This document shows, in pieces, positions 1,026 to 50,307 of a stretch of DNA of 64,000 bases. The stretch lies in the IMG/VR virus record IMGVR_UViG_3300018004_000004, positions 62,001-126,000 of that record; one strand, written 5' to 3'. The notes beneath the pieces are model-generated. The model had not been told where the DNA came from. It did no database searches and saw nothing but the letters and a program-made list of their open reading frames with translations. Both the position numbers and the translations under genes were made by a program. Each line of letters starts with the position of its first letter. Positions within the stretch are counted from its first letter, which is position 1.

Positions 1026-1247
1026 ATGATTACTTTAGGAGTTTTCGTAGCAGTAGCAGTTGCAGAGCTCGCAGTATTCTGCGGCGGTTTCTACGCTGGT
1101 GTGAAGTTGGGCATCGGTGAGCCGGAGAAGCTGTTGGCCGAACTTAAGAACGATGTTCTCGTTCTTCATACCAAGGCTACGGCAGATGTCGAAGTTGCCA
1201 AGACTTGGGTTCTCGCTGAGGTCGCAAAGATCAAGGCAAAGTTGTAA
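1026..1247 (+). CDS. small single-pass membrane protein
   Basis: AAGGAGG RBS before ATG 1026; hydrophobic N-terminus MITLGVFVAVAVAELAVFCGGFYAG followed by an amphipathic helix. Confidence 0.75.
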   Translation: MITLGVFVAVAVAELAVFCGGFYAGVKLGIGEPEKLLAELKNDVLVLHTKATADVEVAKTWVLAEVAKIKAKL

Positions 1248-1256
1248 ATCGTAATC

Positions 1257-1595
1257 CCCTCCAGCAGGCGCTCCCGCCTGTCGATGGAGGGAAATGGCCG
1301 CGACCTTAAGACGCGGCAACAGTGGAGCAGCGTAGAGGTCATTCCTCTCTGTGAACCACTCGAAATGAACGTGGCGGAATAGTTCGTCCTAGCTATACAA
1401 TAACGTCGGCAAGGCCCGGGCGGTAGCCTTAAAAAGCGCTGTCCGGTTGAATCAGGGCCGGGGTCAAGGCTGGGGGAAGTAAACGCGCGGGGATAAAGCG
1501 GGCTGGCCTTATGGTCAGTACTCATCGGAACCCGTGACCGTCGGTTGAGAAAAGGTCATTGCGTGGTGGAGACGGGAATCCACGCCGTTCATTTC
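1257..1595 (+). ncRNA. candidate large structured ncRNA, family unassigned
   Basis: No credible ORF. Hairpins at 1257-1291, 1298-1316 and 1321-1360. A perfect 10-bp long-range helix GAAATGAACG (1362-1371)/CGTTCATTTC (1586-1595) encloses further hairpins. Confidence 0.6.
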
Positions 1596-1609
1596 ATTTC
1601 ATTTTCTGT

Positions 1610-1698
1610 TGCGGGGTCGACTAGTCAGGCCGATGTCGCCAGTCTCATAAACTGGAACCGAAAGGGCACCGTGGGTTCGAATCCCACCTCCGCTACCA
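1610..1698 (+). tRNA. tRNA-Met(CAT), initiator-like acceptor with long variable arm
   Basis: Cloverleaf; anticodon arm CCAGT-CTCATAA-ACTGG; T arm GTGGG-TTCGAAT-CCCAC; encoded CCA; U1.U72 mismatch. Confidence 0.9.
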
Positions 1699-1712
1699 TC
1701 TTAGTTGTAAGC

Positions 1713-1784
1713 CTAGGGGTAGCTTAAGATCGAAAGCCCCGGATAGTACCGGGAGATACCGGACCGAGACCGGGCCCCTAAACC
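1713..1784 (+). ncRNA. non-canonical tRNA-like RNA (6-nt anticodon loop, no TTC) or tRNA pseudogene
   Basis: TAGGGG/CCCCTA acceptor; GCTT/AAGC D stem; CCCGG-ATAGTA-CCGGG; T arm CCGG-ACCGAGA-CCGG. Confidence 0.65.
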
Positions 1785-1799
1785 TTTAAGGAGACGACC

Positions 1800-1997
1800 A
1801 TGAAACGAGTCGCAACTGTAGTTGCTAATGATGGAAACACACGTACGAAAATCACGATCGAAGTGAACAACAAGGGACGTGATTTGACGCGCGACGAAGT
1901 GAAGCATGTAGTTGATCGCCTCACTGGTGACGTCTTCGCCGCGGTACAGAAGACTCCATACAGCAACTATCCCGTCACCGAAATCAAGGTGAAATAA
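1800..1997 (+). CDS. hypothetical protein
   Basis: AAGGAG RBS, ATG, 65 aa. Confidence 0.8.
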   Translation: MKRVATVVANDGNTRTKITIEVNNKGRDLTRDEVKHVVDRLTGDVFAAVQKTPYSNYPVTEIKVK

Positions 1998-2009
1998 GTT
2001 CTGCAGGCC

Positions 2010-2079
2010 GTAGGGTTGGTGCAATGGTTAGAATACCGGCTTTGGACCGGAGATATCCGTTCGATTCGGATACCCTGCA
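2010..2079 (+). tRNA. tRNA-Gln(TTG), degenerate copy without encoded CCA
   Basis: GTAGGGT/ACCCTGC acceptor; CCGG-CTTTGGA-CCGG; ATCCG-TTCGATT-CGGAT; weak D stem. Confidence 0.7.
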
Positions 2080-2090
2080 ATGAGATTAGT

Positions 2091-2137
2091 GCCGACAGCT
2101 GTCCCAGTGCAACATTGGCGGCCGTTCTGGGGTCGGC
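2091..2137 (+). other. intergenic stem-loop between tRNAs
   Basis: GCCGAC/GTCGGC closing stem with inner CCAGTG-CAA-CATTGG hairpin. Confidence 0.4.
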
Positions 2138-2150
2138 CTTGGATTTATGT

Positions 2151-2228
2151 GCCGTGTTAACTCAGTCCGGTCAGAGTGCCTCTCTTACAAAGAGGAAGTC
2201 CGAGGTTCAAATCCTTGACGCGGTACCA
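2151..2228 (+). tRNA. tRNA-Val(TAC)
   Basis: CCTCT-CTTACAA-AGAGG; GTTCAAATC; CCA end. Confidence 0.95.
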
Positions 2229-2244
2229 GATTTAAAGAGGGCAG

Positions 2245-2586
2245 ATGTTAGAGACCCCAAAAGAAGTGCTCGGTGAGGGATATCCTCTGCCAACAGAGCA
2301 GGCGCGTAAGGAAACAGCGCCCATCTGGGAACGAGCATTTGAGATACATGCGACGGCACATGTAGGTGATAGTCGCTTCCACGAAGGGAGCATGCTCCCA
2401 GTGAGAGGAGATGAGTATCACAACGGTACTCCCTACTGTGACTGTTACATGCGAGCCTGGCTGGAGTTTCATGATCCTGTAAAGATAGCAGAACCCCAGG
2501 CTATAGTGCGTGAGAAAGAACGACTACGCGAGCTAGAAGAAGAGAGACAGAAGTTCGCGATAGAATACTTTGAGAGAGTTGTATGA
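2245..2586 (+). CDS. hypothetical protein
   Basis: 113-aa ORF, GAGG RBS, ATGA overlap with the next gene. Confidence 0.7.
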   Translation: MLETPKEVLGEGYPLPTEQARKETAPIWERAFEIHATAHVGDSRFHEGSMLPVRGDEYHNGTPYCDCYMRAWLEFHDPVKIAEPQAIVREKERLRELEEERQKFAIEYFERVV

Positions 2587-3482
2587 TCATCGAGCAGGGT
2601 GAATGCAATCTTAAGGATTGGATCAAAGAGGTCGGCATGTCCGGCCGTATGCAGTCTGTCCTTATTGCTTCTTTCCGCGGCGCTGATTCAGACGACTCAC
2701 CGGAAGTAAAGAGAGTCGTACGTTGGATCCGTAAGCAGTGCATCAAGCTGAACAATCCAAGATCTCATTTCATGAGAGACACGGAGTTCATTGATATTAA
2801 AGCTCTTATGGATCAAGATGCCTGGCAATGGGATCGTTTGAAGACACACTTCTACGATCACCTGAAGCAGGCATTGGCAGTCATAGCATTCTTTCATCCT
2901 GATGAGTGGGTGCAGGCAAAAGCACTTAAGGCCTACCACGATCTGACAGAGCACGAGAGCATTGTGCCCGAGGACCGTGTAGACTTGGTCTCGCGATTGG
3001 CAGATACTAAACCGATCGCGCGCGGTGAATGGGTAGTGCAGGACTGGGTCCTGCAGTTGAGTGGTAAGATGCAATCAGCTTTGTTCTGCGCTATGCGCGG
3101 ATCCGATATCTCTACGGAAGATGAAGTCCGAAGATTAACACGCTGGCTGCGTTGGGTAGTCATGAGAGATGTAATGCCAGAGTCGCATTACATGAAAGAC
3201 AGAGAGTTTATGAGCTTAAAGGTCAGATTCGAAATGTATCCATCGGAGTGGGGTAACCTGCCGATTCACTTCCGGCACCACACCCGAGAAGCGCTCGAGA
3301 TCGTGGGATACATGCATCCGGATAAAGACATCCGTGAACGCGCTCTGGCCGCGTATGAAGATATTTGTAAGAAGTCTAAGGGCAAGCCAGAAACAAAGTC
3401 CATCCTGGTAAATCGTATGAAAGATGAGCCGGGCAGGACTGCTGATCCAAATCAGCAACGAACCAACCTTCCGGTAGCTTAA
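2583..3482 (+). CDS. phage protein made of two tandem copies of a ~135-aa helical domain
   Basis: Both halves share DW..SG(R/K)MQS...RG.D...EV.R..RW.R...SH(F/Y)M.D.EF...HF..H...AL......HPD...R(L/M).D. Confidence 0.85.
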   Translation: MIIEQGECNLKDWIKEVGMSGRMQSVLIASFRGADSDDSPEVKRVVRWIRKQCIKLNNPRSHFMRDTEFIDIKALMDQDAWQWDRLKTHFYDHLKQALAVIAFFHPDEWVQAKALKAYHDLTEHESIVPEDRVDLVSRLADTKPIARGEWVVQDWVLQLSGKMQSALFCAMRGSDISTEDEVRRLTRWLRWVVMRDVMPESHYMKDREFMSLKVRFEMYPSEWGNLPIHFRHHTREALEIVGYMHPDKDIRERALAAYEDICKKSKGKPETKSILVNRMKDEPGRTADPNQQRTNLPVA

Positions 3483-3485
3483 CAC

Positions 3486-3561
3486 TGGTAGGTGGTGCAA
3501 ATGGTAGTCACGCCGGGCCTTGAACCCGGAGATCCTGGTTCGAATCCAGGCCTACCAACCA
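3486..3561 (+). tRNA. tRNA-Gln(TTG) with C33
   Basis: CCGGG-CCTTGAA-CCCGG; CCTGG-TTCGAAT-CCAGG; CCA. Confidence 0.92.
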
Positions 3562-3562
3562 T

Positions 3563-3637
3563 GGGTTCGTAGCTTAAAGGTAGAGCAACCGCCTTTTAAG
3601 CGGTGGAATGCTGGTTCAAATCCAGCCGGACCCACCA
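3563..3637 (+). tRNA. tRNA-Lys(TTT)
   Basis: ACCGC-CTTTTAA-GCGGT; CCA. Confidence 0.95.
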
Positions 3638-3638
3638 C

Positions 3639-3718
3639 GCTCCATTAGCTCAGCGGAAACCAAGAGCACTCGGCTACGGACCGAGGGGTCGGGAGTTCGA
3701 ATCTCTCATGGAGCACCA
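3639..3718 (+). tRNA. tRNA-Arg(ACG)
   Basis: CTCGG-CTACGGA-CCGAG; CCA. Confidence 0.95.
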
Positions 3719-3726
3719 AGTTTCGC

Positions 3727-3802
3727 GGGCTTGTAGCTCAGACGGAAGAGCAGCGGAGTTCTAACCCGCAGGCAGAGAGTTCGAATCTCTCCAAGCTCGC
3801 CA
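3727..3802 (+). tRNA. tRNA-Arg(TCT)
   Basis: GCGGA-GTTCTAA-CCCGC (G32, A.C at 31:39); CCA. Confidence 0.9.
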
Positions 3803-3812
3803 AGATTTACGT

Positions 3813-3887
3813 TGCCTACTCGTTTAACTGGTAGGACGCCAGCCTCTGGAGCTGGATATGAAGGTTCGAGTCCTTCGAAGGCAACCA
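3813..3887 (+). tRNA. tRNA-Gln(CTG)
   Basis: CCAGC-CTCTGGA-GCTGG; CCA. Confidence 0.93.
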
Positions 3888-3898
3888 CATATTTACTA

Positions 3899-3973
3899 GC
3901 CATGGTAGCTCCAATGTAGAGCTGCGCACCTGTAATGCGCGGGTTGGGGGTTCAAGTCCCTCCCATGGCTCCA
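3899..3973 (+). tRNA. tRNA-Thr(TGT) with C33
   Basis: GCGCA-CCTGTAA-TGCGC; GCCATGG/CCATGGC acceptor, U73, CCA; D loop lacks GG. Confidence 0.92.
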
Positions 3974-3983
3974 CGAGGTCACA

Positions 3984-4196
3984 ATGAACCAAGGAAGACC
4001 AGCACCGAAGCAATGCCCGTCAGTGGGTCAAGGTGTCACCTTGGTTGCAGGCTACACCCAGATGATGCTGGGCGCCAGGGTGAACAAGACGTGGAACCCA
4101 ACTACAAGACAGTGGGAGTTCATGAGCCGGCCGGCCCTCACAGAAGGAACCAACGGCGGCAAGAGATTCGCATTTGGGCCATCTAAGCTGATCTAA
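3984..4196 (+). CDS. hypothetical protein
   Basis: GAGGT RBS, ATG, 70 aa, fills an inter-tRNA gap. Confidence 0.65.
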   Translation: MNQGRPAPKQCPSVGQGVTLVAGYTQMMLGARVNKTWNPTTRQWEFMSRPALTEGTNGGKRFAFGPSKLI

Positions 4197-4199
4197 GTA

Positions 4200-4208
4200 T
4201 GGTATAAT
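4200..4208 (+). promoter_or_regulatory. extended -10 promoter element TGGTATAAT
   Basis: Exact TGnTATAAT in an intergenic position; the same 9-mer recurs at 8367. Confidence 0.6.
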
Positions 4209-4214
4209 GGGTTT

Positions 4215-4379
4215 GTGTTCAACCCAATCTATCCGACCTGCTCTAAGTGGTGGCGCGCTGTTTTCCGGCTGCGCACCATAGAAAGAGATGGAAGCTTTCA
4301 GATACGCTGTAGATTGGTGAAATCAGATAAGTGTTGTCGGTTCTATTGGTTAGTTATACGTAGGCAACTACTATACTAA
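4215..4379 (+). CDS. possible leaderless small protein (54 aa)
   Basis: GTG 7 nt after TATAAT; MFNPIYPTCSKWWRAVFRLRT...LLY*. Confidence 0.35.
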   Translation: MFNPIYPTCSKWWRAVFRLRTIERDGSFQIRCRLVKSDKCCRFYWLVIRRQLLY

Positions 4380-4384
4380 TCAGG
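4368..4384 (+). promoter_or_regulatory. putative phage promoter motif CTACTATACTAATCAGG
   Basis: 17-mer identical to the reverse complement of 63212-63228; lies just upstream of tRNA-Gly. Confidence 0.6.
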
Positions 4385-4391
4385 GGTACGA

Positions 4392-4465
4392 GCGAGGTTG
4401 GTATAGTGGTAGCACGTGACCTTGCCAAGGTCGAGGCACCGGTTCGAATCCGGTACTTCGCTCCA
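4392..4465 (+). tRNA. tRNA-Gly(GCC)
   Basis: TGACC-TTGCCAA-GGTCG; U73; CCA. Confidence 0.95.
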
Positions 4466-4472
4466 GGATCTT

Positions 4473-4595
4473 ATGCTAGCTTATGCAATAACTTGCACTG
4501 TTCTAATGGCTGCTGTTTACTTCGCGCCATTCTGCAAGAAAGGGTTTCGACCCGACCAATCACCAAAGTACACGGTGGGTCCTCTTAAGGGATAA
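4473..4595 (+). CDS. small membrane peptide (40 aa)
   Basis: MLAYAITCTVLMAAVYFAPFCKKGFRPDQSPKYTVGPLKG*; exactly fills the gap between the two tRNA-Gly genes. Confidence 0.55.
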   Translation: MLAYAITCTVLMAAVYFAPFCKKGFRPDQSPKYTVGPLKG

Positions 4596-4604
4596 TCGGG
4601 ACCA

Positions 4605-4680
4605 GCGGCTGTGATGTTAACGGCCAGCATGTCTGCCTTCCAAGCAGAATGTATCGGTTCGAATCCGATTAGCCGCTCCA
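4605..4680 (+). tRNA. tRNA-Gly(TCC)
   Basis: TCTGC-CTTCCAA-GCAGA; U73; CCA. Confidence 0.95.
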
Positions 4681-4687
4681 AGCTCTC

Positions 4688-4772
4688 GAAGCACGGTAAG
4701 GGTCATGGCCCTACACGGACGCATACGGATGATGTACCATGAGCCGTCCGGCGCAGCCGCATTACGTGCTTC
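4688..4772 (+). ncRNA. candidate small multi-branched RNA (non-tRNA cloverleaf)
   Basis: GAAGCACG/CGTGCTTC closing stem; inner arms AGGGT/GCCCT, CGGACG/CGTCCG, GCG/CGC. Confidence 0.55.
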
Positions 4773-4776
4773 CCGG

Positions 4777-4853
4777 GCCTCCGTAGCTCAGCCTAGCAGA
4801 GCACCGGGCATCTAACCCGGGGGTCATCCGCGAAACACGGATCGGGGGCTCCA
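4777..4853 (+). ncRNA. non-canonical tRNA-like RNA (nominal TCT anticodon, A33, no D-loop GG, no TTC)
   Basis: All four stems pair (GCCTCCG/CGGGGGC, GCTC/GAGC, CCGGG/CCCGG, ATCCG/CGGAT) and CCA is encoded; loops are AGCCTAGCA, CATCTAA and CGAAACA. Confidence 0.8.
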
Positions 4854-4858
4854 CGATC

Positions 4859-5062
4859 TTGCCTCTGGCTCCTCGTAAGAGGGGTAGTTCAAAGCTCACA
4901 GGGGCGCCAAGTGTAGTAGATGTAATCCGAGTCGCCGATCTTGACGACCTTCAAAGTGAGGTACACCGATGTTCAAACAACATCGGCACCGCCATCTTCA
5001 TCATCGCCACTACGGAAGAGGGCTATATCTTCTACTGGAGTGGGAAGGTGACGGAGTGGTAG
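4859..5062 (+). CDS. hypothetical protein
   Basis: 67-aa ORF, TTG start, fills the gap. Confidence 0.45.
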   Translation: MPLAPRKRGSSKLTGAPSVVDVIRVADLDDLQSEVHRCSNNIGTAIFIIATTEEGYIFYWSGKVTEW

Positions 5063-5085
5063 TGTCTTCCTTAGGAGGAACGTTA

Positions 5086-5466
5086 ATGATTCAAGTATCA
5101 GACAGTTTGCTTTCAAATCTCGCGTTGGCACTCGTTGACCAGCTCGGTTTCCCAGCCAATCTGGATGGCGTAACTGCAGTATGGTCGATCGACAACGCGA
5201 ATGTTGGTTCCATTGTGGGCAACAACTTCGCAGCTGTGTTCACACCTGGAACAGATTTGACCGACGTCGGAACCATCACAGCAGCCGTGAGCATCAATGG
5301 CACGTTTGCTTTCAATGTAACCGTCCAGGTCCAGGTTGTATCTGGTGCACCAGTGAGTGGTACAATCACACTGAGTGGCACTTCTCCTCTGCCGGCCGCT
5401 GCACCCGCAGCCCCAGCAGCTCCAGCAGCCCCTGCAGCCCCAGCGGCAACAGGCGCAACAGCCTAA
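5086..5466 (+). CDS. beta-rich (Ig-like) protein with (PAA)n tail
   Basis: TAGGAGG RBS before ATG 5086; alternating beta-strand pattern with WSIDN; C-terminal PAAAPAAPAAPAAPAAPAA. Confidence 0.8.
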   Translation: MIQVSDSLLSNLALALVDQLGFPANLDGVTAVWSIDNANVGSIVGNNFAAVFTPGTDLTDVGTITAAVSINGTFAFNVTVQVQVVSGAPVSGTITLSGTSPLPAAAPAAPAAPAAPAAPAATGATA

Positions 5467-5479
5467 AGTAGTCCTAAGT

Positions 5480-5506
5480 CCTGAGGGGTGAGTAAGGCCC
5501 CTCAGG
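5480..5506 (+). other. stable hairpin after the gene (terminator or processing signal)
   Basis: CCTGAGGGG/CCCCTCAGG 9-bp stem, no U tract. Confidence 0.5.
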
Positions 5507-5527
5507 CAGAGATTAGAAGTATAAGAT

Positions 5528-5660
5528 TGGTAGCGCGAAAAGCGACAGGTAGCCCCTCTGTATACCGAGGGCAGGTGCTGAATCGTCCCAGACGTGGGGT
5601 GATTTGGAAGTTGGTCCACCGGAAGGCCAGCGCGGTTGTCGTGTAAGCCGTGCGCTATTG
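5528..5660 (+). ncRNA. candidate ~130-nt multi-branched RNA
   Basis: TAGCGC/GCGCTA and GCGACAG/TTGTCGT nested closing stems enclose three hairpins (5552-5572, 5581-5604, 5610-5631). Confidence 0.6.
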
Positions 5661-5678
5661 ATATTCCAAGAGGTTGCT

Positions 5679-5810
5679 ATGTGCACAATGAAGTGTCCTG
5701 TGTGCGGTAAGCAGGTTAGCAAACCTCAGCCTAAAGACGAGTTCGTCTGCCCATGTGGTTGGCGATCGGAAGCAAAAAAGAACAACGGAGAACATCATGA
5801 AGAACAGTAA
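5679..5810 (+). CDS. small zinc-ribbon protein
   Basis: GAGGT RBS; MKCPVCGK...FVCPCGW. Confidence 0.7.
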   Translation: MCTMKCPVCGKQVSKPQPKDEFVCPCGWRSEAKKNNGEHHEEQ

Positions 5811-5952
5811 CGGGTCTAAGACACCTCCAGCACAACTTAGCAAGACCCCGTATATCGGCGACCCGATCTTCGCGTCACCGACCACACACAAGGCAAAGGC
5901 CATCAAGCCTACTCAGCCGAAGGTGGCAAACTCGGGCGTCAAAAAGGGCTAA
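5797..5952 (+). CDS. small Lys/Pro-rich basic protein
   Basis: GGAG RBS; MKNSNGSKTPPAQLSKTPYIG...GVKKG. Confidence 0.7.
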   Translation: MKNSNGSKTPPAQLSKTPYIGDPIFASPTTHKAKAIKPTQPKVANSGVKKG

Positions 5953-5965
5953 GCCGGCAACGGTA

Positions 5966-6088
5966 ATGGCCCTCAGAAAGAAAGCGAAGAAGGCCTCATG
6001 GTTTAACCATGGGGCCACTCGACTAGCCGCGGCTACAGTACAAATGTACAAGCCGCAGAAGCCATTACCGCAACCCAAAGCAAAGTAA
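5966..6088 (+). CDS. small basic peptide (40 aa)
   Basis: MALRKKAKKASWFNHGATRLAAATVQMYKPQKPLPQPKAK*. Confidence 0.55.
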   Translation: MALRKKAKKASWFNHGATRLAAATVQMYKPQKPLPQPKAK

Positions 6089-6121
6089 TACTCCCACCTT
6101 TGGCTTGCCGTCCTGGCAGGC

Positions 6122-6127
6122 TATAAT
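6122..6127 (+). promoter_or_regulatory. -10 element TATAAT upstream of tRNA-Asn
   Basis: Consensus hexamer, intergenic; -35 weak. Confidence 0.45.
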
Positions 6128-6145
6128 ACAACATAGAGATTCTAC

Positions 6146-6221
6146 TGGAGTGTGGCTCAACCGGTACAGCATCTGGCCGTTAACCAGACACTTGGGGGTT
6201 CGAGTCCCTCTGCTCCAGCCA
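6146..6221 (+). tRNA. tRNA-Asn(GTT) with C33
   Basis: TCTGG-CCGTTAA-CCAGA; G73; CCA. Confidence 0.92.
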
Positions 6222-6226
6222 AGCTT

Positions 6227-6625
6227 ATGAAAGAGACGCCCAAAGTAGAGAAGCGCATATACGTTGTCCTCCCTTCATTCGTCATATCACCGACGATGTT
6301 CCTAAGAGAGGTCATTCCGATGTCCTGCGGCCGCTGTATAGCACAGGCATGTCATGTGGTATCGAAGCTGAAGCTGAGACTTAAACTGGATCCCGATGAA
6401 GAACACACAACCATCGTCCTCAAAGTCGTTGACAGCGACGAGCTGGAAAAAGTCCGTGATAAGATCTCACGCTCGCGTCTTCCGTGGGAAGAGTTTCGCG
6501 ATACCAACCCCGGGTACTATAAGACTGAAAAGTCCATCCTAACCGCGGTTGCTGTTTGTTGTTCGAGAAAGAAAGGTAAGTCACTGTTCCATGGCTACGA
6601 TGCCTGGCAGTGTGATGTGGAGTAA
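6227..6625 (+). CDS. peptidyl-tRNA hydrolase, Pth2 family
   Basis: MSCGRCIAQACH, IVLKVVDSDELE, EFRD and LTAVA match Pth2 motifs (MS.GK..AQ..HA; K.VLK.....EL; I.D; T...GP). The true start is ATG 6227, after tRNA-Asn. Confidence 0.82.
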   Translation: MKETPKVEKRIYVVLPSFVISPTMFLREVIPMSCGRCIAQACHVVSKLKLRLKLDPDEEHTTIVLKVVDSDELEKVRDKISRSRLPWEEFRDTNPGYYKTEKSILTAVAVCCSRKKGKSLFHGYDAWQCDVE

Positions 6626-6634
6626 ACTCGTGAA

Positions 6635-6720
6635 GAACGATACAATGGGCGGATGCATTCGATTGCTAGGCCTGCTTAGTTAGCAGGCCCGCGGACTGCC
6701 GTCCCCGGACCTTGTAGTTC
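6635..6720 (+). ncRNA. candidate rod-like structured RNA
   Basis: Nested GAAC/GTTC, TACAA/TTGTA, GGGCGG/CCGTCC and terminal GGCCTGCT/AGCAGGCC helices. Confidence 0.4.
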
Positions 6721-6723
6721 AAG

Positions 6724-6802
6724 GCGCTGGTGGACAAAATGGCAAAGCCGCCTCGTTCAGACCGAGGAGATTTTGTGGGTTCGAATCCCACCCAGCGCAC
6801 CA
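6724..6802 (+). tRNA. tRNA-Leu(CAG) lacking the long variable arm
   Basis: CCTCG-TTCAGAC-CGAGG; Leu-type D arm; variable region only AGATTTT; A73; CCA. Confidence 0.88.
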
Positions 6803-6815
6803 AGTTTATCGATGT

Positions 6816-6904
6816 GCTGGAGTGGCGTAACTGGCAGCCGCGCAGGGCTCAAGCCCCTGTGGCCCTAGAAAGCCGTGAGAGTTCGAATCTCTCCTTCAGC
6901 ACCA
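6816..6904 (+). tRNA. tRNA-Leu(CAA)
   Basis: CAGGG-CTCAAGC-CCCTG; long variable arm; CCA. Confidence 0.95.
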
Positions 6905-6905
6905 A

Positions 6906-6990
6906 GTACCTGTGCTGAAACTGGTAGCCAGCCGCGGTTGAGAGCCGCGTGCCGCAAGGCGTGGAGGTTCGAATCCTCTCAGGTACACCA
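6906..6990 (+). tRNA. tRNA-Leu(GAG)
   Basis: CGCGG-TTGAGAG-CCGCG; GCC-GCAA-GGC variable arm; CCA. Confidence 0.95.
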
Positions 6991-6995
6991 AGATT

Positions 6996-7313
6996 ATGAT
7001 ACCAACGCTTCTCAAGATCGCAGTGGGTATTCTGATTCCGGCCGCAACAGCAGACGGAGTCAGCACAGCTCACTTTCTGAGGAAAGGTTACACTGAAGCA
7101 GATCGAATCATGATCTGGATCTACGGCACCGATGATCCTTCAGTGAAGAGGATGTGGGTTCGTAGCAGCATTGCCGTAGCACTCGAGGTCCTTGTAGCAG
7201 GTATTGCAGCGCATTACTGGACACCTGCAGGATACGGATTTGGAGTTGGGTATCTGTGCCAGGCAGCTTATCACGTCTACTGTACAGTGAACAACTATAG
7301 GAACGTGCCATGA
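6996..7313 (+). CDS. small multi-pass membrane protein (DUF5658-like)
   Basis: Three hydrophobic segments; D..ST...L.KG..E motif shared with 7496-7849. Confidence 0.7.
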   Translation: MIPTLLKIAVGILIPAATADGVSTAHFLRKGYTEADRIMIWIYGTDDPSVKRMWVRSSIAVALEVLVAGIAAHYWTPAGYGFGVGYLCQAAYHVYCTVNNYRNVP

Positions 7314-7381
7314 AAGGCGGACAGAGCAGCGGAGTCGGTTATCGTAGCGCTTAATGAGCGCACGGAGAGGTGCGCTTCCAT

Positions 7382-7471
7382 GGAGGCGCAGCAGAGACGG
7401 GGATCTGCACTTGGCCGTAACCCAAGGTCCCAACGGGACTAGAGAAGGTTCAAATCCTTCCGTCTCCACCA
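7382..7471 (+). tRNA. tRNA-Tyr(GTA) with C33 and C8
   Basis: GGAGGCG/CGTCTCC acceptor; CTTGG-CCGTAAC-CCAAG; GTCCC/GGGAC variable arm; A73; CCA. Confidence 0.9.
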
Positions 7472-7495
7472 AGTTTAGAAGTACAAGGAGCAAAT

Positions 7496-7849
7496 ATGTT
7501 TGATCCATCGACAGATCCAAGAACGTGGCCCAATCAACCGGGCTTCTGGGAATCACTCGGTATCTTCGTTCTGTATGCTTACATGCTCGTTGCTATCCTG
7601 GGCGACACGTATTACACAGGGGTCGGACTGGCAAAGGGATTGAAGGAAATGAATCCTATCAATCGCTGGCTCTTCCCCAAGTTGGGTCAAGCATTGACTT
7701 GTTTTGTTGAAGCCGCGGCAATCACAGTAGTAGGTGGAGTCTTCATGGCCTATAGTATGCCGCTGGCTTATGGTTATTGGGGACTCATCGCAGCCCTCGA
7801 AACCTGGATGGTTTATCGTAATCGCAAGATCCTAGGATTGAGTTTGTAA
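7496..7849 (+). CDS. small multi-pass membrane protein (DUF5658-like)
   Basis: AAGGAG RBS; GDTYYTGVGLAKGLKEMNPINRWLF motif; three TM segments. Confidence 0.8.
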   Translation: MFDPSTDPRTWPNQPGFWESLGIFVLYAYMLVAILGDTYYTGVGLAKGLKEMNPINRWLFPKLGQALTCFVEAAAITVVGGVFMAYSMPLAYGYWGLIAALETWMVYRNRKILGLSL

Positions 7850-7895
7850 TGACGCGCGCACTAGAGCCACGACCCGAACGACCGTAAAAGGTCAC

Positions 7896-7969
7896 CGGGG
7901 TGTGTTCTAGTGGTAGGATCCATGCGTCGGAAGCATGGGGCGGAGGTTCGATTCCTCCCACCCCGACCA
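7896..7969 (+). tRNA. tRNA-Pro(CGG) with G32 and A37
   Basis: CATGC-GTCGGAA-GCATG; C1-G72, A73; CCA. Confidence 0.92.
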
Positions 7970-7978
7970 GATTTCCGT

Positions 7979-8053
7979 GGGGCAGTGGCGCAACGGGAGC
8001 GCAGATGCTTTGCAAGCATAAGGTTGTGGGTTCGATTCCCATCTGCTCCACCA
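7979..8053 (+). tRNA. tRNA-Ala(TGC)
   Basis: G3.U70; loop TTTGCAA; CCA. Confidence 0.95.
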
Positions 8054-8063
8054 AGGATTGACA

Positions 8064-8276
8064 ATGATCATCGAATCATACGTAACTGAAGTAGTAGATA
8101 CCGACACGAAGCAGAAGAGAGCTTTTGTCGGTGTAGTTGGTGGCGAAGTACTGTTGGATGTTCCCTTCAAGGATACCGATAACGAGAATCTGATCAAGAC
8201 TCTCGTATGCGCTATCAGGGTTCTCGAACAGAAGCTGGTAGATGCTGGCCAGCCGCCATTTGGTGGTATAGTTTAA
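8064..8276 (+). CDS. hypothetical protein
   Basis: AAGGA RBS; 70 aa; fills the tRNA gap. Confidence 0.7.
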   Translation: MIIESYVTEVVDTDTKQKRAFVGVVGGEVLLDVPFKDTDNENLIKTLVCAIRVLEQKLVDAGQPPFGGIV

Positions 8277-8279
8277 CGC

Positions 8280-8357
8280 AGGCCGGTCGTTTAGCCCGGT
8301 CCAGGACCTCGGTCTCCAAAACCGATGACGGTGGTTCAAATCCATCCTGGCCTGCCA
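8280..8357 (+). tRNA. tRNA-Trp(CCA)
   Basis: TCGGT-CTCCAAA-ACCGA; G73; CCA. Confidence 0.95.
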
Positions 8358-8366
8358 AAGGATTTG

Positions 8367-8375
8367 TGGTATAAT
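8367..8375 (+). promoter_or_regulatory. extended -10 promoter element TGGTATAAT
   Basis: Exact TGnTATAAT upstream of the Ser/Ser/Phe tRNA group. Confidence 0.6.
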
Positions 8376-8438
8376 AAAAACATGAACGATACAGCCAACT
8401 CGAGTAGTAGAAGCTCATCACGATCTACCCGTGTATAC

Positions 8439-8528
8439 GGAGGGTTGGCTGAGTTTGGAAAGGCGCCAGGTTGCTAACCTGAGGCCTGGTGAAAGCCAGC
8501 GTAGGTTCAAATCCTACACCCTCCGCCA
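8439..8528 (+). tRNA. tRNA-Ser(GCT)
   Basis: Loop TTGCTAA; long variable arm; G73; CCA. Confidence 0.95.
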
Positions 8529-8534
8529 AGTTTA

Positions 8535-8623
8535 GGAGGGCAGCGCTGAATGGTCGGCAACGGTCCCGAAAACCGAGACTCGTCGAAAGGCGAGACAGAG
8601 TTCGATTCTCTGGCCCTCCTCCA
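8535..8623 (+). tRNA. tRNA-Ser(CGA) with C33, A8 and U73
   Basis: GGAGGGC/GCCCTCC; CGGT-CCCGAAA-ACCG; long variable arm CTCGTC-GAAA-GGCGAG; CCA. Confidence 0.88.
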
Positions 8624-8625
8624 AA

Positions 8626-8699
8626 CCCGCGGTCGTTCAATGGTAGGACCCCTGACTGAAGATCAGGAGATGATGGTTCGAATCCATCCCAAGGGACCA
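8626..8699 (+). tRNA. tRNA-Phe(GAA), two acceptor-stem mismatches, G37
   Basis: CCTGA-CTGAAGA-TCAGG; CCCGCGG/CCAAGGG acceptor; CCA. Confidence 0.88.
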
Positions 8700-8706
8700 C
8701 AAGTTT

Positions 8707-8877
8707 ATGAGTAGTACAGAAGATCTGATTTACAGGCTGCGCAAGCGCGCTGAGATACGAAGGCAGATAACTACACGCAAGAGCGTACAAGAAGGAAAGC
8801 CTGATCGTATCGCCGATCTTCTGGAAGAAGCAGCCAATGAGCTGCAAAGATTATTGGATTTGACCTGTAGTAGATGA
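8707..8877 (+). CDS. small conserved-type phage protein (56 aa), absent from the ORF track
   Basis: MSSTEDLIYRLRKRAEIRRQITTRKSVQEGKPDRIADLLEEAANELQRLLDLTCSR*. Confidence 0.8.
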   Translation: MSSTEDLIYRLRKRAEIRRQITTRKSVQEGKPDRIADLLEEAANELQRLLDLTCSR

Positions 8878-9002
8878 GTAGTCCTTGTATTCTGGCTCTG
8901 CCATTCGGAAATAGCAGAGCGCGTCAATCGGCACGGTGTTGTACAATCCGTGGTGGCGCTCACGGATTACAACGAGACTAATCATCTAGGTCAGTTGTTC
9001 TT

Positions 9003-9096
9003 AGGTCTGCAGGAGCTGTAGTCACCACTGCATAAGCTGGTGCCCCCACATTACGGGGGAGAGCTGGCGTCGCCTTTGAGTGCTACAGTTAGACCT
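9003..9096 (+). ncRNA. candidate rod-like structured RNA with internal bubble
   Basis: AGGTCT/AGACCT; AGCTGTAG(T)CAC/GTGCTACAGTT bulged helix; terminal CCCCC/GGGGG hairpin. Confidence 0.5.
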
Positions 9097-9107
9097 TCGT
9101 ATTTCGC

Positions 9108-9186
9108 GGTGATATGGGACAGTCTGGCCTACTCCGCTCCCCTGTCACGGGAAACCTCGCCGGTTCAAATCCGGCTATCACCGCCA
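9108..9186 (+). tRNA. tRNA-Asp(GTC)
   Basis: Loop CTGTCAC; G73; CCA. Confidence 0.93.
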
Positions 9187-9187
9187 A

Positions 9188-9262
9188 GGCCCTATCGTCT
9201 ATGGGATAGGACTCCGGCTTCTCAAGCCGGCAACCCGGGTTCGATTCCCGGTGGGGTCACCA
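9188..9262 (+). tRNA. tRNA-Glu(CTC)
   Basis: CCGGC-TTCTCAA-GCCGG; CCA. Confidence 0.95.
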
Positions 9263-9296
9263 GTTTAACTTAGTCAAGGTCGGAGGACCAAGTACT

Positions 9297-9743
9297 ATGA
9301 GTAATGAAAAGAAAGACGCTACGCTTGGTATGTCACACGGTACGGCTACAAATAGATTACGTAAGCAGATAATGTTTAGATTACTGCAACGTTTGAATGA
9401 GAACTTTTGCTTTCGTTGTGGATGTGAAATACAATCAGTAGATGATCTAAGCATCGAACATAAGCAGCCTTGGGAAGGTATCAGTGCTGACTTATTCTGG
9501 GATGAAGAGAACATTGCCTTTTCTCACTTGCGATGCAATAGACCAGATAGACCAAGCGGTAGAAATGCGAATGCCAAGATTCCACCAATAGAAGGTGTAT
9601 GCTGGTGCGTTCCTGGCGATCATTTTGCTCCAGTCGATAACTTCTACAAGAATGAAAGTAGACCGACAGGATTACAGAACTGGTGCAAGGATCATAGACC
9701 TCCTCGATTAGGAGGCTACCACAAGTTTGCGATGCTCTGTTAG
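9297..9743 (+). CDS. HNH endonuclease with C-terminal Zn-binding domain
   Basis: CFRCG...LSIEHKQPW...NIAFSHLRCN; C-terminal CWC..DHF...NFYKN.SRPTGLQNWCKDH. Confidence 0.88.
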   Translation: MSNEKKDATLGMSHGTATNRLRKQIMFRLLQRLNENFCFRCGCEIQSVDDLSIEHKQPWEGISADLFWDEENIAFSHLRCNRPDRPSGRNANAKIPPIEGVCWCVPGDHFAPVDNFYKNESRPTGLQNWCKDHRPPRLGGYHKFAMLC

Positions 9744-9930
9744 TCAGCCGTGTATACGGAACATCATCGCCGATACGGTGACGTTAATCAACAGGAGTGT
9801 AACGAGCCTCGAAAACTCGTTTCGTCTGAAAAACCTCCGACCCTTGAGTTTAGATGTGTCGAGCGAGGACACATCGCATGGCTATCTGGGCGCCTCGAGC
9901 CGAAGGGTAGCCAGAGTTTAGCGGGACTAA
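9740..9930 (+). ncRNA. candidate ~190-nt multi-hairpin RNA directly after the HNH gene
   Basis: TTAGTC/GACTAA closing stem; hairpins CCGTG/TACGG, CATCG/CGGTG, AACGAG/CTCGTT, GATGTGTC/GACACATC, TGGCTATC/GGTAGCCA. Confidence 0.6.
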
Positions 9931-9940
9931 GTAGCTAGTG

Positions 9941-9990
9941 CTTTCCCCATCGGCTGCTACCTTGCCGTCGGCGGCATGGCCAGGGGAAAG
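9941..9990 (+). other. intergenic hairpin
   Basis: CTTTCCCC/GGGGAAAG closing stem with inner TGCCG/CGGCA. Confidence 0.45.
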
Positions 9991-10035
9991 GATCCTGTTC
10001 GCGACTGGATCTCACCCGCGGGTTTAGGAGACACA

Positions 10036-10194
10036 ATGTTTACACTTCTCAAGGTTGTAGTGGAAGGGATTCTTACCCTTCTTGTTTTCTTTGGCGGCAT
10101 GAAGTTCCAGCAACACTACCCTAACTTCATTGCGCGCGTTGATAGTATCCTAGCATGGATCAAGAACATCCTGCCAGGTACAACGAAGTCTTAA
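10036..10194 (+). CDS. small membrane protein (52 aa)
   Basis: TAGGAG RBS; MFTLLKVVVEGILTLLVFFGGMKF. Confidence 0.75.
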   Translation: MFTLLKVVVEGILTLLVFFGGMKFQQHYPNFIARVDSILAWIKNILPGTTKS

Positions 10195-10196
10195 GT

Positions 10197-10271
10197 GCCC
10201 AAGTCGTACATGGGTTAGGATCCCAATCTTTCAAGTTGGGGAACAGAGTTCGAGTCTCTGCTCGGGTACCA
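10197..10271 (+). tRNA. tRNA-Glu(TTC)
   Basis: CCAAT-CTTTCAA-GTTGG; CAGAG-TTCGAGT-CTCTG; CCA. Confidence 0.9.
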
Positions 10272-10272
10272 A

Positions 10273-10422
10273 ATGAACTTCAAGCGAAAGCGACCAAAGA
10301 ACGCACGCAGTGGCTGCCTAATGTGCAAGCCACATAAGATGAATGGAATCAAACATACTTACCATGTCAAAGGTATCAGAGGCAAGGTGAACATCAAGGA
10401 TTTAGAACGGAGAGTGGCCTAG
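10273..10422 (+). CDS. small basic CxxC protein (49 aa), absent from the ORF track
   Basis: MNFKRKRPKNARSGCLMCKPHKMNG...; the 3' end overlaps tRNA-Pro. Confidence 0.7.
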   Translation: MNFKRKRPKNARSGCLMCKPHKMNGIKHTYHVKGIRGKVNIKDLERRVA

Positions 10423-10486
10423 TCCGGTTTAAGGCGCGTGCCTTGGGCGCACGAGATCGAGAGTTCAAATCTCTCCTCTCCGACCA
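10408..10486 (+). tRNA. tRNA-Pro(TGG)
   Basis: CGTGC-CTTGGGC-GCACG; CCA. Confidence 0.95.
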
Positions 10487-11137: not shown

Positions 11138-11483
11138 GGGGACGTCCCGGTTTCGACAGATAGCGGAACGACCTGAATGCATGCCGGTGCCTGACGACCG
11201 TAACTGTTGGAAAACTTTAACTGCAGAGTTTGAAGAACTGCCGTTGGCTGCTTAAAGCAGCCACGTCCTACCTGACGATGCCTATTGATTGGGCTAGGGC
11301 GTAAACTAGTGGGCTAAGCTTCCCGGGTCAGCTCCCTGCGAGCCGGGCGGATGAAAACCAAGAAGGGATACTGGGACCTCACTTGTCCGGTCTGTAGGCC
11401 CCTGAGAAACCGAACGGAATAAGCATGTAGTATTCATAAGTAATGCTTTCTGGACACGGGTTCAACTCCCGTCGTCTCCACCA
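11138..11483 (+). ncRNA. ssrA: tmRNA; tag ORF 11223-11255 = (A)AEFEELPLAA*
   Basis: 5' GGGGACGTCCCGGTTTCGAC; 3' GACACGGGTTCAACTCCCGTCGTCTCCACCA with G3.U70; TAACT before the GCA resume codon; stop codon inside a hairpin. Confidence 0.96.
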
Positions 11484-38917: not shown

Positions 38918-39576
38918 TAGGTGCCACCAACTATCCCATGATCATCTGGATTGACCGTATTGAAGGAGTAGGCGAAGGAAGCCTTTGAAACAGTGCCAGC
39001 CACAGGTGTTTCTTGATACTGAACACTGGTAGAGGTAAACGGAGTAGTCATGGGAGGAATACGATGTGATTCTGCCACAACATGATCCATCTCCTGGAAC
39101 GGACCCAGGGTGCGAAGAATATCATGATGCTGTTCCGATACATACGGAAGAAGTCGGCATCTGATGTAGGTGTTATCGAACTTGCTATCGAGGATCCCTG
39201 GAGTCACAACATTCCCCTGGTTATCCACAACGCCTGCATTGTCTTCTACCGCGGCAATCCAGACCAAGTAGTTACCAGTATTCTGATCCACGACAGGATT
39301 CGCAAGTTTATTAGGGTCAGTCGTACCGGAGAGATATAGAACGGGGTCGGGTCCTTGACCGCTATCAGGATCTGCATTTGCTTGCTGCTGAATCCAGATA
39401 CGCCGCGGACAGGAGGTACGGTATGGGTCCGTAGATGTGTCGCCGGCTTTGCTGAAGTTCTGACAATGCGAGCAGGGACTAACTACCGCCAACTCTTTCT
39501 GAGCAGCTGACTTAGTAGAATCCGACGTGCTGGCAATCCTGAGACCTAGCTCAGCGTTGCGTTGATCCTTTGCCAC
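38917..39576 (-). CDS. hypothetical protein (central-spike position)
   Basis: GGAGG RBS with GTG start; CxxC...C motif. Confidence 0.7.
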   Translation of the reverse strand: MAKDQRNAELGLRIASTSDSTKSAAQKELAVVSPCSHCQNFSKAGDTSTDPYRTSCPRRIWIQQQANADPDSGQGPDPVLYLSGTTDPNKLANPVVDQNTGNYLVWIAAVEDNAGVVDNQGNVVTPGILDSKFDNTYIRCRLLPYVSEQHHDILRTLGPFQEMDHVVAESHRIPPMTTPFTSTSVQYQETPVAGTVSKASFAYSFNTVNPDDHGIVGGT

Positions 39577-39587
39577 ATCTACCTCCT

Positions 39588-39602
39588 CTGATTAGTATAC
39601 CA
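39588..39602 (-). promoter_or_regulatory. putative promoter TGGTATACTAATCAG
   Basis: Intergenic; shares the TATACTAATCAG core with 4372 and 63212. Confidence 0.6.
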
Positions 39603-39612
39603 TATCGCGTGG

Positions 39613-50237: not shown

Positions 50238-50274
50238 ATTCGGCTTATCTCACTGATTTAATGGCTCTAATCGA

Positions 50275-50306
50275 CTCCTAGGGCCCTTTACGGGGCATTC
50301 TAGGAG
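50275..50306. other. intergenic hairpin between the two giant genes
   Basis: CTCCTAG/CTAGGAG with inner GCCCT/GGGGC. Confidence 0.45.
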
Positions 50307-50307
50307 C

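What the first reader, a model, noticed from the sequence alone, without database searches (positions are those of the whole stretch)
1257..1595. ~340-nt ornate non-coding RNA candidate at the head of the tRNA array
Seen: three consecutive 5' hairpins, then a domain closed by a perfect 10-bp helix (1362-1371/1586-1595). Inside are CCGGGCGGT(A)GC/GCGCTGTCCGG, GCTGGCC-TTAT-GGTCAGT and GCGTGG/CCACGC, plus interleaved CTCA/TGAG and TGACC/GGTCA pairings that suggest a pseudoknot. Established: large ornate RNAs such as GOLLD and ROOL occur next to phage tRNA clusters. Inference: a compact relative or a new large ncRNA class. I cannot assign it to a family by eye.
Basis: partly seen in the sequence, partly recalled or inferred. 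Interest (0 to 1): 0.72.

Follow-up and report, generated by a model that had tools for sequence, protein, structure and literature searches.

The report
New structured phage RNA beside tRNAs
A roughly 340-base stretch in front of the tRNA genes of an uncultured 215-kb phage from peat is a real, intricately folded non-coding RNA. It matches no described RNA family, and its job is still unknown.

Summary
Window 1257-1595 (+ strand) lies between a 73-aa ORF and tRNA-Met, has no conserved ORF, and forms three 5' hairpins followed by a domain closed by the perfect 10-bp helix 1362-1371/1586-1595.

I found ten distinct versions in related ~210-kb phage contigs. I reached them through a neighbouring 299-aa gene.

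- **Structure:** across nine full-length versions, 93% of cells in 64 proposed pairs are standard pairs, against 79% in shuffles and 31-45% in slid controls. 33 pairs show compensatory changes.
- **Strand:** G-U pairs outnumber A-C by 56 to 8, which fixes the + strand.
- **Family:** Rfam 15 gives no match even at E<=10 for three versions, so it is not GOLLD, ROOL, RNase P or an intron.
- **Distribution:** one copy per genome, always upstream of the array's first tRNA (Met), and absent from several close relatives.

Two peat metatranscriptome contigs cover it.

Best reading: an accessory, stable, compactly folded RNA made from the tRNA-array transcript, similar in context to GOLLD and ROOL. Its function is inferred, not shown.

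The parts
1026..1247 (+). Upstream 73-aa ORF (membrane/coiled-coil-like). Its stop codon lies 9 nt before the RNA's first hairpin. Homologues sit directly upstream of the RNA in L004, and upstream of it but separated by a further gene in L017.
1257..1291 (+). Hairpin H1 (1257-1269 with 1276-1291). The structure is kept in all lineages but the sequence varies.
1297..1317 (+). Hairpin H2 (GCCGCG/CGCGGC).
   Evidence: 5 of 6 pairs with compensatory changes
1321..1360 (+). Hairpin H3 (outer 1321-1328/1353-1360, inner 1335-1338/1344-1347).
1362..1371 (+). 5' strand of the closing helix of the main domain.
   Evidence: three compensatory pairs in L017 and one in L010
1372..1415 (+). Junction with invariant blocks (…ACGTGGCGGAA… and …TAYAATAAC…). 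Contains a weakly supported small hairpin, 1373-1376/1385-1389.
1416..1446 (+). Hairpin B. Variable in length (about 30-70 nt among homologues). 5 of 6 basal pairs are compensatory.
1447..1486 (+). Conserved junction (GGTTGA.. / ..GGAAAGTAAAC) with a weakly supported hairpin C, 1456-1459/1468-1471.
1487..1535 (+). Helix D (1487-1491 GCGGG with 1531-1535 CCCGT). It encloses hairpin E (1502-1508/1513-1519) and the 5' strand of the pseudoknot (1521-1526).
   Evidence: D is compensatory in four lineages (L004/L010, L020/L025, L017, L012)
1536..1557 (+). Helix F (1536-1539 GACC with 1554-1557 GGTC). It encloses the 3' strand of the pseudoknot (1544-1549 GTTGAG), which pairs with 1521-1526 CTCATC. 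An invariant AAAA linker follows the pseudoknot strand.
   Evidence: pseudoknot 98% paired, 5 of 6 pairs compensatory; F pair 1537/1556 switches A-U to G-C in 4 sequences
1561..1585 (+). Hairpin G (GCGTGG/CCACGC) with a conserved 13-nt loop (…TGGAGACGGGAAT…).
   Evidence: 5 of 6 pairs compensatory
1586..1595 (+). 3' strand of the closing helix.
1596..1609 (+). U-rich tail linking the RNA to the next gene. A T-rich run follows the closing helix in all lineages.
1610..1698 (+). tRNA-Met(CAT), the first gene of the array of 25 tRNAs plus a tmRNA. An RNase P cut at its 5' end would define the RNA's 3' end in this phage (inferred).

Best explanation
SHOWN. Window ~1257-1600 (+ strand) encodes a structured non-coding RNA of about 340 nt that belongs to a previously uncatalogued family. 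It has three 5' hairpins and then a ~235-nt domain closed by a 10-bp helix. The 3' half of that domain (1472-1585) is a compact core built from helix D, hairpin E, a pseudoknot, helix F and hairpin G. These are joined by nearly invariant purine-rich strands.

The RNA is single-copy and sits between cistrons. It starts 2-10 nt after the upstream stop codon in most lineages and ends 9-19 nt before the next gene. It always lies upstream of the first tRNA (Met) of the phage's tRNA/tmRNA array. It is present in some members of one clade of ~210-kb peat/soil phages and absent from others.

INFERRED, about 45% likely. It has no room for a promoter of its own, so it is transcribed as part of the polycistronic transcript that runs into the tRNA array. 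It is then trimmed out by the nucleases that mature the tRNAs; in this phage, RNase P cutting at 1609/1610 would make its 3' end. It persists as a stable, compactly folded particle protected by its terminal helices. It then acts in trans as an accessory factor that binds or mimics a conserved cellular or phage macromolecule of the translation/tRNA sphere. This is the role suspected for GOLLD and ROOL RNAs, which occupy the same kind of genomic place.
For: - **Non-coding:** no + strand stop-free stretch longer than 63 codons, frames differ between homologues, and indels are not multiples of three.
- **Structure:** 93.4% of cells paired against 79.1% in shuffles (0/500); 33 pairs with double changes; slid controls 31-45%. 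The 5' hairpins have 19 of 28 compensatory pairs.
- **Strand:** 56 G-U cells against 8 A-C cells.
- **New family:** no Rfam hit at gathering score or at E<=10 for three versions. No BLAST hit in 50,697 phage records.
- **Distribution:** a covariance model of the core finds exactly one copy in each of ten lineages and none elsewhere.
- **Selection:** the core is 74-80% identical in phages whose neighbouring 299-aa gene is only 69-71% identical at DNA level. Many unpaired positions are invariant.
- **Intercistronic position and varying downstream gene:** tRNA-Met in four lineages, a 203/205-aa Cys-rich protein in three lineages (L004, L020, L025), and a 111-aa membrane protein in L017.
- **Accessory pattern:** relatives L015, L022, L026, L027, L029 and L182 keep the array and flanking genes but lack the RNA.
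- **Expression hint:** in two peat metatranscriptomes, the only contigs of this phage within 800-2600 are 100%-identical pieces at 1157-1389 and 1267-1510.
- **Context precedent:** GOLLD and ROOL are phage/prophage RNAs often near tRNA islands (PMC12286853; PMC5737381).
Against: No transcript ends are known. The RNA-library pieces are low-depth assembled contigs. DNA carry-over cannot be excluded, and one piece (1157-1389) runs from the upstream ORF into the RNA, which would also fit an unprocessed mRNA segment.

No partner, ligand or activity is identified. No protein gene co-occurs with the RNA. A cis-acting role at the head of the array fits the position equally well.

The family is small: ten sequences in about seven lineages. 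All were found through one neighbouring gene, so the true distribution is unknown.
Confidence: 0.5

Rival explanations
1. It is a cis-acting leader of the tRNA/tmRNA array. The folded RNA stays on the nascent transcript and changes what RNA polymerase or processing enzymes do downstream. Examples are processive antitermination through a long, largely untranslated and highly structured operon (as HK022 put RNA or the EAR element do, from my own knowledge), attenuation at the closing helix plus U-run, or a landing platform for tRNA-processing nucleases.
For: The RNA is always upstream of the first tRNA of the array and on the same strand, whatever gene follows immediately. It has no promoter space of its own and abuts its neighbours. 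The closing helix is followed by a T-rich run in all lineages. One RNA-library contig bridges the upstream ORF and the RNA.
Against: Close relatives have the same array and no such element, and nothing replaces it, so array expression does not need it. At ~340 nt with many invariant unpaired bases it is far larger than known antitermination RNAs. The closing helix is AU-rich with a 215-nt 'loop', so it is a poor intrinsic terminator; the terminator scan found none here. No boxA-like sequence was seen (by eye).
Confidence: 0.25
2. It is a ribozyme, either self-cleaving or acting on other RNAs such as tRNA precursors. The pseudoknotted, sequence-invariant 3' core would be the active site.
For: The RNA is large, with a nested pseudoknot and many invariant unpaired nucleotides in junctions and in the loop of hairpin G. 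[quoted passage not shown] It sits next to RNAs that need processing.
Against: There is no match to any known ribozyme family in Rfam. No conserved cleavage-site context could be recognised. The by-eye likeness to RNase P motifs does not survive inspection of the architecture.
Confidence: 0.1
3. It is a miniaturised or highly diverged member of a known family: GOLLD, ROOL, RNase P RNA or a group I intron.
For: Its context is like GOLLD and ROOL. Short words resemble RNase P conserved regions (GGAAAGU…; …GGAACCCGU…), seen by eye.
Against: No Rfam hit at E<=10 for three versions. The helix formed by …GCGGG/CCCGU… encloses only ~40 nt, namely one hairpin plus a pseudoknot strand. P4 of RNase P encloses the whole specificity domain and P15-P18. 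The strand following it pairs downstream, not back to a P2/P1. The flanks are different genes in different phages, so there are no exons to join.
Confidence: 0.03
4. The conservation is at the DNA or protein level (a promoter or operator, an origin, or a small ORF), and the apparent RNA structure is incidental.
For: An invariant TAYAAT-containing block (1394-1404) looks like a -10 box. A 32-codon ORF exists at 1284-1382, and longer stop-free runs exist on the - strand.
Against: Compensatory changes occur in 33 pairs, including helices that span the TAYAAT block. The G-U excess is strand-specific. ORFs are not conserved in frame or length. No sigma-70-like promoter was found on the + strand.
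Confidence: 0.02

Closest known systems
GOLLD RNA (Rfam RF01998)
   Same: A phage/prophage-encoded, highly structured ncRNA of unknown function that often lies next to tRNA islands. One studied example lies beside a tRNA-Met (PMC12286853).
   Different: GOLLD RNAs often exceed 800 nt and have a universally conserved 3' half. This RNA is ~340 nt, gives no covariance-model match, and has a different helix plan. Whether it forms oligomeric cages as GOLLD does was not tested.
ROOL RNA (Rfam RF03087)
   Same: A phage/prophage RNA near tRNA islands with multiple pseudoknots and no known protein partner (PMC5737381; PMC12286853).
   Different: [quoted passage not shown] This RNA has one main multi-helix domain and one demonstrated pseudoknot, occurs in one phage clade, and gives no model match.
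Stable RNAs 'species 1 and 2' of the phage T4 tRNA cluster (from my own knowledge, not checked here)
   Same: Small stable RNAs of unknown function encoded within a phage tRNA gene cluster, co-transcribed with the tRNAs and released by the tRNA-processing machinery. This is the maturation route I infer here.
   Different: They are much smaller (~120-140 nt) and less ornate. No sequence relation was tested or is expected.
Processive antitermination RNAs (HK022 put, EAR; from my own knowledge)
   Same: Folded RNA elements at the head of a long operon that act in cis on the transcribing polymerase. EAR contains a pseudoknot.
   Different: They are about 70-130 nt. This element is about three times larger and is dispensable in close relatives with the same array.
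Bacterial RNase P RNA (RF00010/RF00011)
   Same: Similar size (~340-400 nt), a link to tRNA processing, a closing P1-like helix, and short words resembling CR-I and CR-V.
   Different: No model match. The candidate 'P4' encloses ~40 nt instead of the whole specificity domain. There is no P2/P3 arrangement.

Membership tests
GOLLD RNA | Match to the family covariance model (conserved 3' half) | tested here: not met
   No Rfam hit at E<=10 for window 1150-1800, L017 4640-5040 or L020 3362-3720
GOLLD RNA | Length typically above 800 nt | tested here: not met
   322-361 nt in nine versions
GOLLD RNA | Phage/prophage location near tRNA genes | tested here: met
   Upstream of tRNA-Met at the head of a 25-tRNA array in a 215-kb virus record
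GOLLD / ROOL RNAs | Homo-oligomeric nanocage assembly | not testable with these tools
   Complex prediction refuses RNA-only jobs
ROOL RNA | [quoted passage not shown] | tested here: not met
   No Rfam hit. ~340 nt with one demonstrated pseudoknot
RNase P RNA (bacterial A/B, archaeal, type T) | Match to a family model with conserved regions CR-I to CR-V | tested here: not met
   No hit at E<=10
RNase P RNA (bacterial A/B, archaeal, type T) | Long-range P4 helix enclosing P5-P18, with its 3' strand followed by the P2 and P1 3' strands | tested here: not met
   Helix D (1487-1491/1531-1535) encloses only hairpin E and one pseudoknot strand. The next strand pairs downstream as helix F
Group I / group II intron | Model match, and insertion within a gene whose exons join | tested here: not met
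   No Rfam hit. The flanks are complete, unrelated genes that differ between phages
Riboswitch / gene-specific 5' leader | Constant association with one downstream gene family, plus an expression platform | tested here: not met
   The downstream neighbour is tRNA-Met, a 203/205-aa Cys-rich protein or a 111-aa membrane protein, depending on lineage. No terminator-like site was found
tmRNA / tRNA-like RNA | tRNA-like domain and tag reading frame, called by ARAGORN or Rfam | tested here: not met
   ARAGORN and Rfam call nothing in 1257-1609. The phage's tmRNA is elsewhere, at 11138-11483

The most novel reading that the evidence does not exclude
The RNA is the founding member of a new class of self-sufficient RNA machines carried by soil jumbo phages. 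It would be either a new large ribozyme or an RNA-only particle or decoy that engages the host's tRNA/translation apparatus or a tRNA-targeting defence. Its double-nested pseudoknot core would be the active or binding site.
Probability: 0.2. Interest if true: 0.85.

Novelty: new variant of a known kind. Interest (0 to 1): 0.62.

Why it matters
Large, intricately folded bacterial and phage RNAs are rare. Those understood so far are ribozymes, ribonucleoprotein scaffolds or, as shown for GOLLD, ROOL and OLE, RNA-only assemblies (PMC12286853).

This is a third, unrelated ornate RNA sitting beside a phage tRNA island, alongside GOLLD and ROOL. It strengthens the idea that phages pair such RNAs with their tRNA sets for a common and still unknown reason.

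At ~340 nt, and with a well-defined secondary structure, it is a more tractable object for probing, cryo-EM and activity assays than its larger counterparts. It also comes from peat-soil jumbo phages, a group with almost no functional annotation.

Tried and rejected
- **Rfam.** The gathering-score scan of the whole window gave only tRNAs and the tmRNA. Permissive scans (E<=10) of three versions gave nothing in the RNA.
- **BLAST.** The 362-nt region against 50,697 phage records gave no match. Megablast of 12 kb gave only a 33-nt tRNA word shared with Tunturiibacter phage Tunturi_5.
- **RNase P idea.** I raised it from GGAAAGU and GGAACCCGU words seen by eye. I rejected it on architecture and on the absence of any model hit.
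- **Second candidate partner for CCCGU.** The AAGCGGG at ~1498-1504 is rejected by the covariation pattern. Changes in four lineages are matched only by the 1487-1491 strand.
- **Pattern scans for more members.**
  - The 28-nt core pattern found only the known viral contigs and nothing in 185,579 species genomes.
All were chance by the covariance model, best 16 bits.
  - A 5'-block pattern added two chance hits.
- **151 Acidobacteriota genomes.** One 24-bit hit, antisense to a STAS-like coding sequence, so chance.
- **Extra long-range pairings.** A search among invariant strands gives several mutually exclusive candidates, for example 1372-1377 with 1538-1543. None has variation to test it.
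- **The neighbouring 299-aa protein.** No Pfam hit and no usable atlas lead.
- **Co-occurrence.** No protein gene tracks the presence of the RNA.

Full report
**Where it is.** The window is bases 62001-126000 of a 215,395-base virus record rated complete. Positions 1610-10486 carry 25 tRNA genes, followed by a tmRNA at 11138-11483. The finding occupies the gap between a 73-codon ORF that ends at 1247 and the first tRNA, tRNA-Met(CAT), at 1610-1698. The exact sequence occurs in at least 18 peat, wetland and soil DNA runs from 2014-2020.

**Checking the observation.** On its own the sequence folds only about 2.3 standard deviations better than shuffles, and so does the opposite strand. A single-sequence argument would therefore be weak.

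**Finding relatives.** DNA searches of cultured phages found nothing. The neighbouring 299-aa protein (2583-3482) has about 30 relatives at 51-89% identity in metagenomes. I fetched their contigs. An nhmmer search with the region, iterated once, found the element in ten distinct versions:
- the window sequence, which has identical copies in L002, L003 and L005;
- L007, L008, L009, L004 and L010;
- L020, with a partial copy in L021;
- L025 and L017;
- L012, which is cut off by the end of its contig.

The versions are 322-361 nt long. They are 70-81% identical to the window overall, and 74-90% identical in the 3' core. In the distant relatives (L012, L017, L020, L025) this is higher than the 69-71% DNA identity of the neighbouring gene.

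**Structure.**
- RNAalifold on nine full-length versions predicted 60 pairs, 28 of them with compensatory changes.
The final model has 64 pairs in 12 helices.
- In that model 93.4% of cells are standard pairs, against 79.1 +/- 1.0% in 500 column shuffles (none reaches the observed value) and 31-45% when partners are slid by 1-3 columns. 33 pairs have changes on both sides.
- The pseudoknot 1521-1526/1544-1549 is 98% paired, with 5 of 6 pairs compensatory. It crosses both helix D (1487-1491/1531-1535, compensatory in four lineages) and helix F (1536-1539/1554-1557).
- The closing helix has three compensatory pairs in L017 and one in L010.
- The three 5' hairpins have 19 of 28 compensatory pairs.
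- Two small hairpins (1373-1389 and 1456-1471) are only weakly supported.
- G-U cells outnumber A-C cells 56 to 8, so the + strand is the RNA strand.
- No reading frame is conserved.

**What it is not.** Rfam 15 gives no match in the element at the gathering score, or at E<=10, for three divergent versions. This covers GOLLD, ROOL, OLE, raiA, RNase P, introns, riboswitches and known ribozymes. Two words resemble RNase P conserved regions. However, the helix they would form encloses only one hairpin and a pseudoknot strand, and the next strand pairs downstream. The architecture is therefore different.

A covariance model of the 3' core (R1) gave the following:
- It scores 111-136 bits on the ten members.
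- It finds exactly one copy per genome.
- It finds nothing in relatives that lack an nhmmer hit.
- It finds nothing real in the 107 loci fetched by the two looser pattern scans of the viral and species-genome collections.
- In 151 Acidobacteriota genomes it gives a single 24-bit match, antisense to a coding sequence, which I count as chance.

**Context.** In every relative the array begins with tRNA-Met(CAT), and in most tRNA-Val(TAC) follows. Where present, the element is always upstream of that tRNA-Met.
- In the window, L007, L008 and L009, the tRNA starts 14 nt after the closing helix.
- In L004, L020 and L025, an ORF for a conserved 203/205-aa Cys-rich protein starts 9-17 nt after it.
- In L017, an ORF for a 111-aa membrane protein starts 19 nt after it.
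- Upstream, the first hairpin begins 2-10 nt after a stop codon in most lineages, and 43 nt after it in L017.

The element is thus wedged between cistrons with no room for its own promoter, and no sigma-70-like promoter or terminator-like site was found. Relatives L015, L022, L026, L027, L029 and L182 keep the flanking genes and the array but lack the element, and nothing replaces it. No protein gene tracks its presence. The surrounding block is itself variable: a ClpB-like AAA+ gene, a 141-aa gene and the 205-aa gene come and go.

**Expression.** Four RNA libraries share words with 1000-2300. When laid on 800-2600, two peat metatranscriptomes of one study each give a single 100%-identical contig of this phage. 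The contigs lie at 1267-1510 (depth 2.2) and 1157-1389 (depth 6.7), and nothing covers the flanking ORFs. This is suggestive of accumulation. It is not proof, because these are assembled contigs, DNA carry-over is possible, and no ends are defined.

**Interpretation.** Shown: a new, strongly constrained, pseudoknotted ncRNA of about 340 nt at the head of a phage tRNA array.

Inferred:
- It is transcribed with its neighbours.
- It is released by tRNA-processing nucleases. In this phage, RNase P at 1609/1610 would cut it free.
- It persists as a compact particle that acts in trans on a conserved partner.

The accessory, patchy distribution, the changing downstream gene and the many invariant unpaired bases favour this over a gene-specific leader. 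The fixed position ahead of the array keeps a cis-acting role (antitermination or a processing platform) as the main rival. A ribozyme remains possible.

The closest known things are GOLLD and ROOL, which are phage RNAs often near tRNA islands and of unknown function (PMC12286853, PMC5737381). Only the context is shared with them, not the fold or the sequence. An earlier survey of IMG/VR reported candidate structured RNAs of 29-151 nt (PMC10690425). Its supplementary alignments are not held, so I could not check whether a fragment of this RNA is among them.

**Limits.** There are ten sequences from about seven lineages, all reached through one neighbouring gene. No 3D or oligomer prediction was possible for RNA alone.

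Noticed in passing
window 1610-1698: The first tRNA of the array, tRNA-Met(CAT), is 89 nt long with a ~12-nt extra arm, which is unusual for a CAU-anticodon tRNA. An 88-89-nt form is also present in L004, L008, L017, L020 and L025. Other relatives have a 74-78-nt form.
   Followed up: partly
window 1716-1782: The spacer after tRNA-Met folds as a cloverleaf-like, tRNA-like element that ARAGORN does not call. It has a weak, sub-threshold YrlA hit of 22 bits. The corresponding place in L009 is called a tRNA with a 4-nt anticodon, and L008 has a call with a 2-nt anticodon.
   Followed up: partly
window 11138-11483: A phage-encoded tmRNA (Rfam 150 bits) with tag peptide AEFEELPLAA closes the tRNA array. 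Relative L015 has one with tag ADIYEALPLAA.
   Followed up: no
window 2583-3482: This 299-aa protein is an internal duplication: two ~140-aa halves with invariant W/H/D/R positions, including HF..H and HPD motifs. It is conserved at the head of the array in all relatives. It has no Pfam family and no usable atlas or structure lead.
   Followed up: partly
window 3502-3574 (- strand): ARAGORN calls a tRNA-Arg(tcg) on the minus strand, overlapping tRNA-Gln and tRNA-Lys on the plus strand. The same mirror call appears in L010. It is probably an artefact of tRNA symmetry.
   Followed up: no
L004 5133-5744; L020 3718-4335; L025 4328-4945; L015 4552-5175: A conserved 203-207-aa Cys-rich protein lies between the RNA (or a ClpB-like AAA+ gene) and tRNA-Met in many relatives. 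It is missing from the window's genome and is not annotated at the corresponding place in L017.
   Followed up: partly
G000 outside the window: 8456-8931, 39441-40051, 205189-205649: The same phage genome has other gaps of 460-610 nt with no ORF of 70 or more codons on either strand. These could hold further non-coding RNAs.
   Followed up: no
window 39613-55233 (- strand): Three consecutive very large ORFs of 1951, 1589 and 1641 aa lie in the structural-gene region.
   Followed up: no
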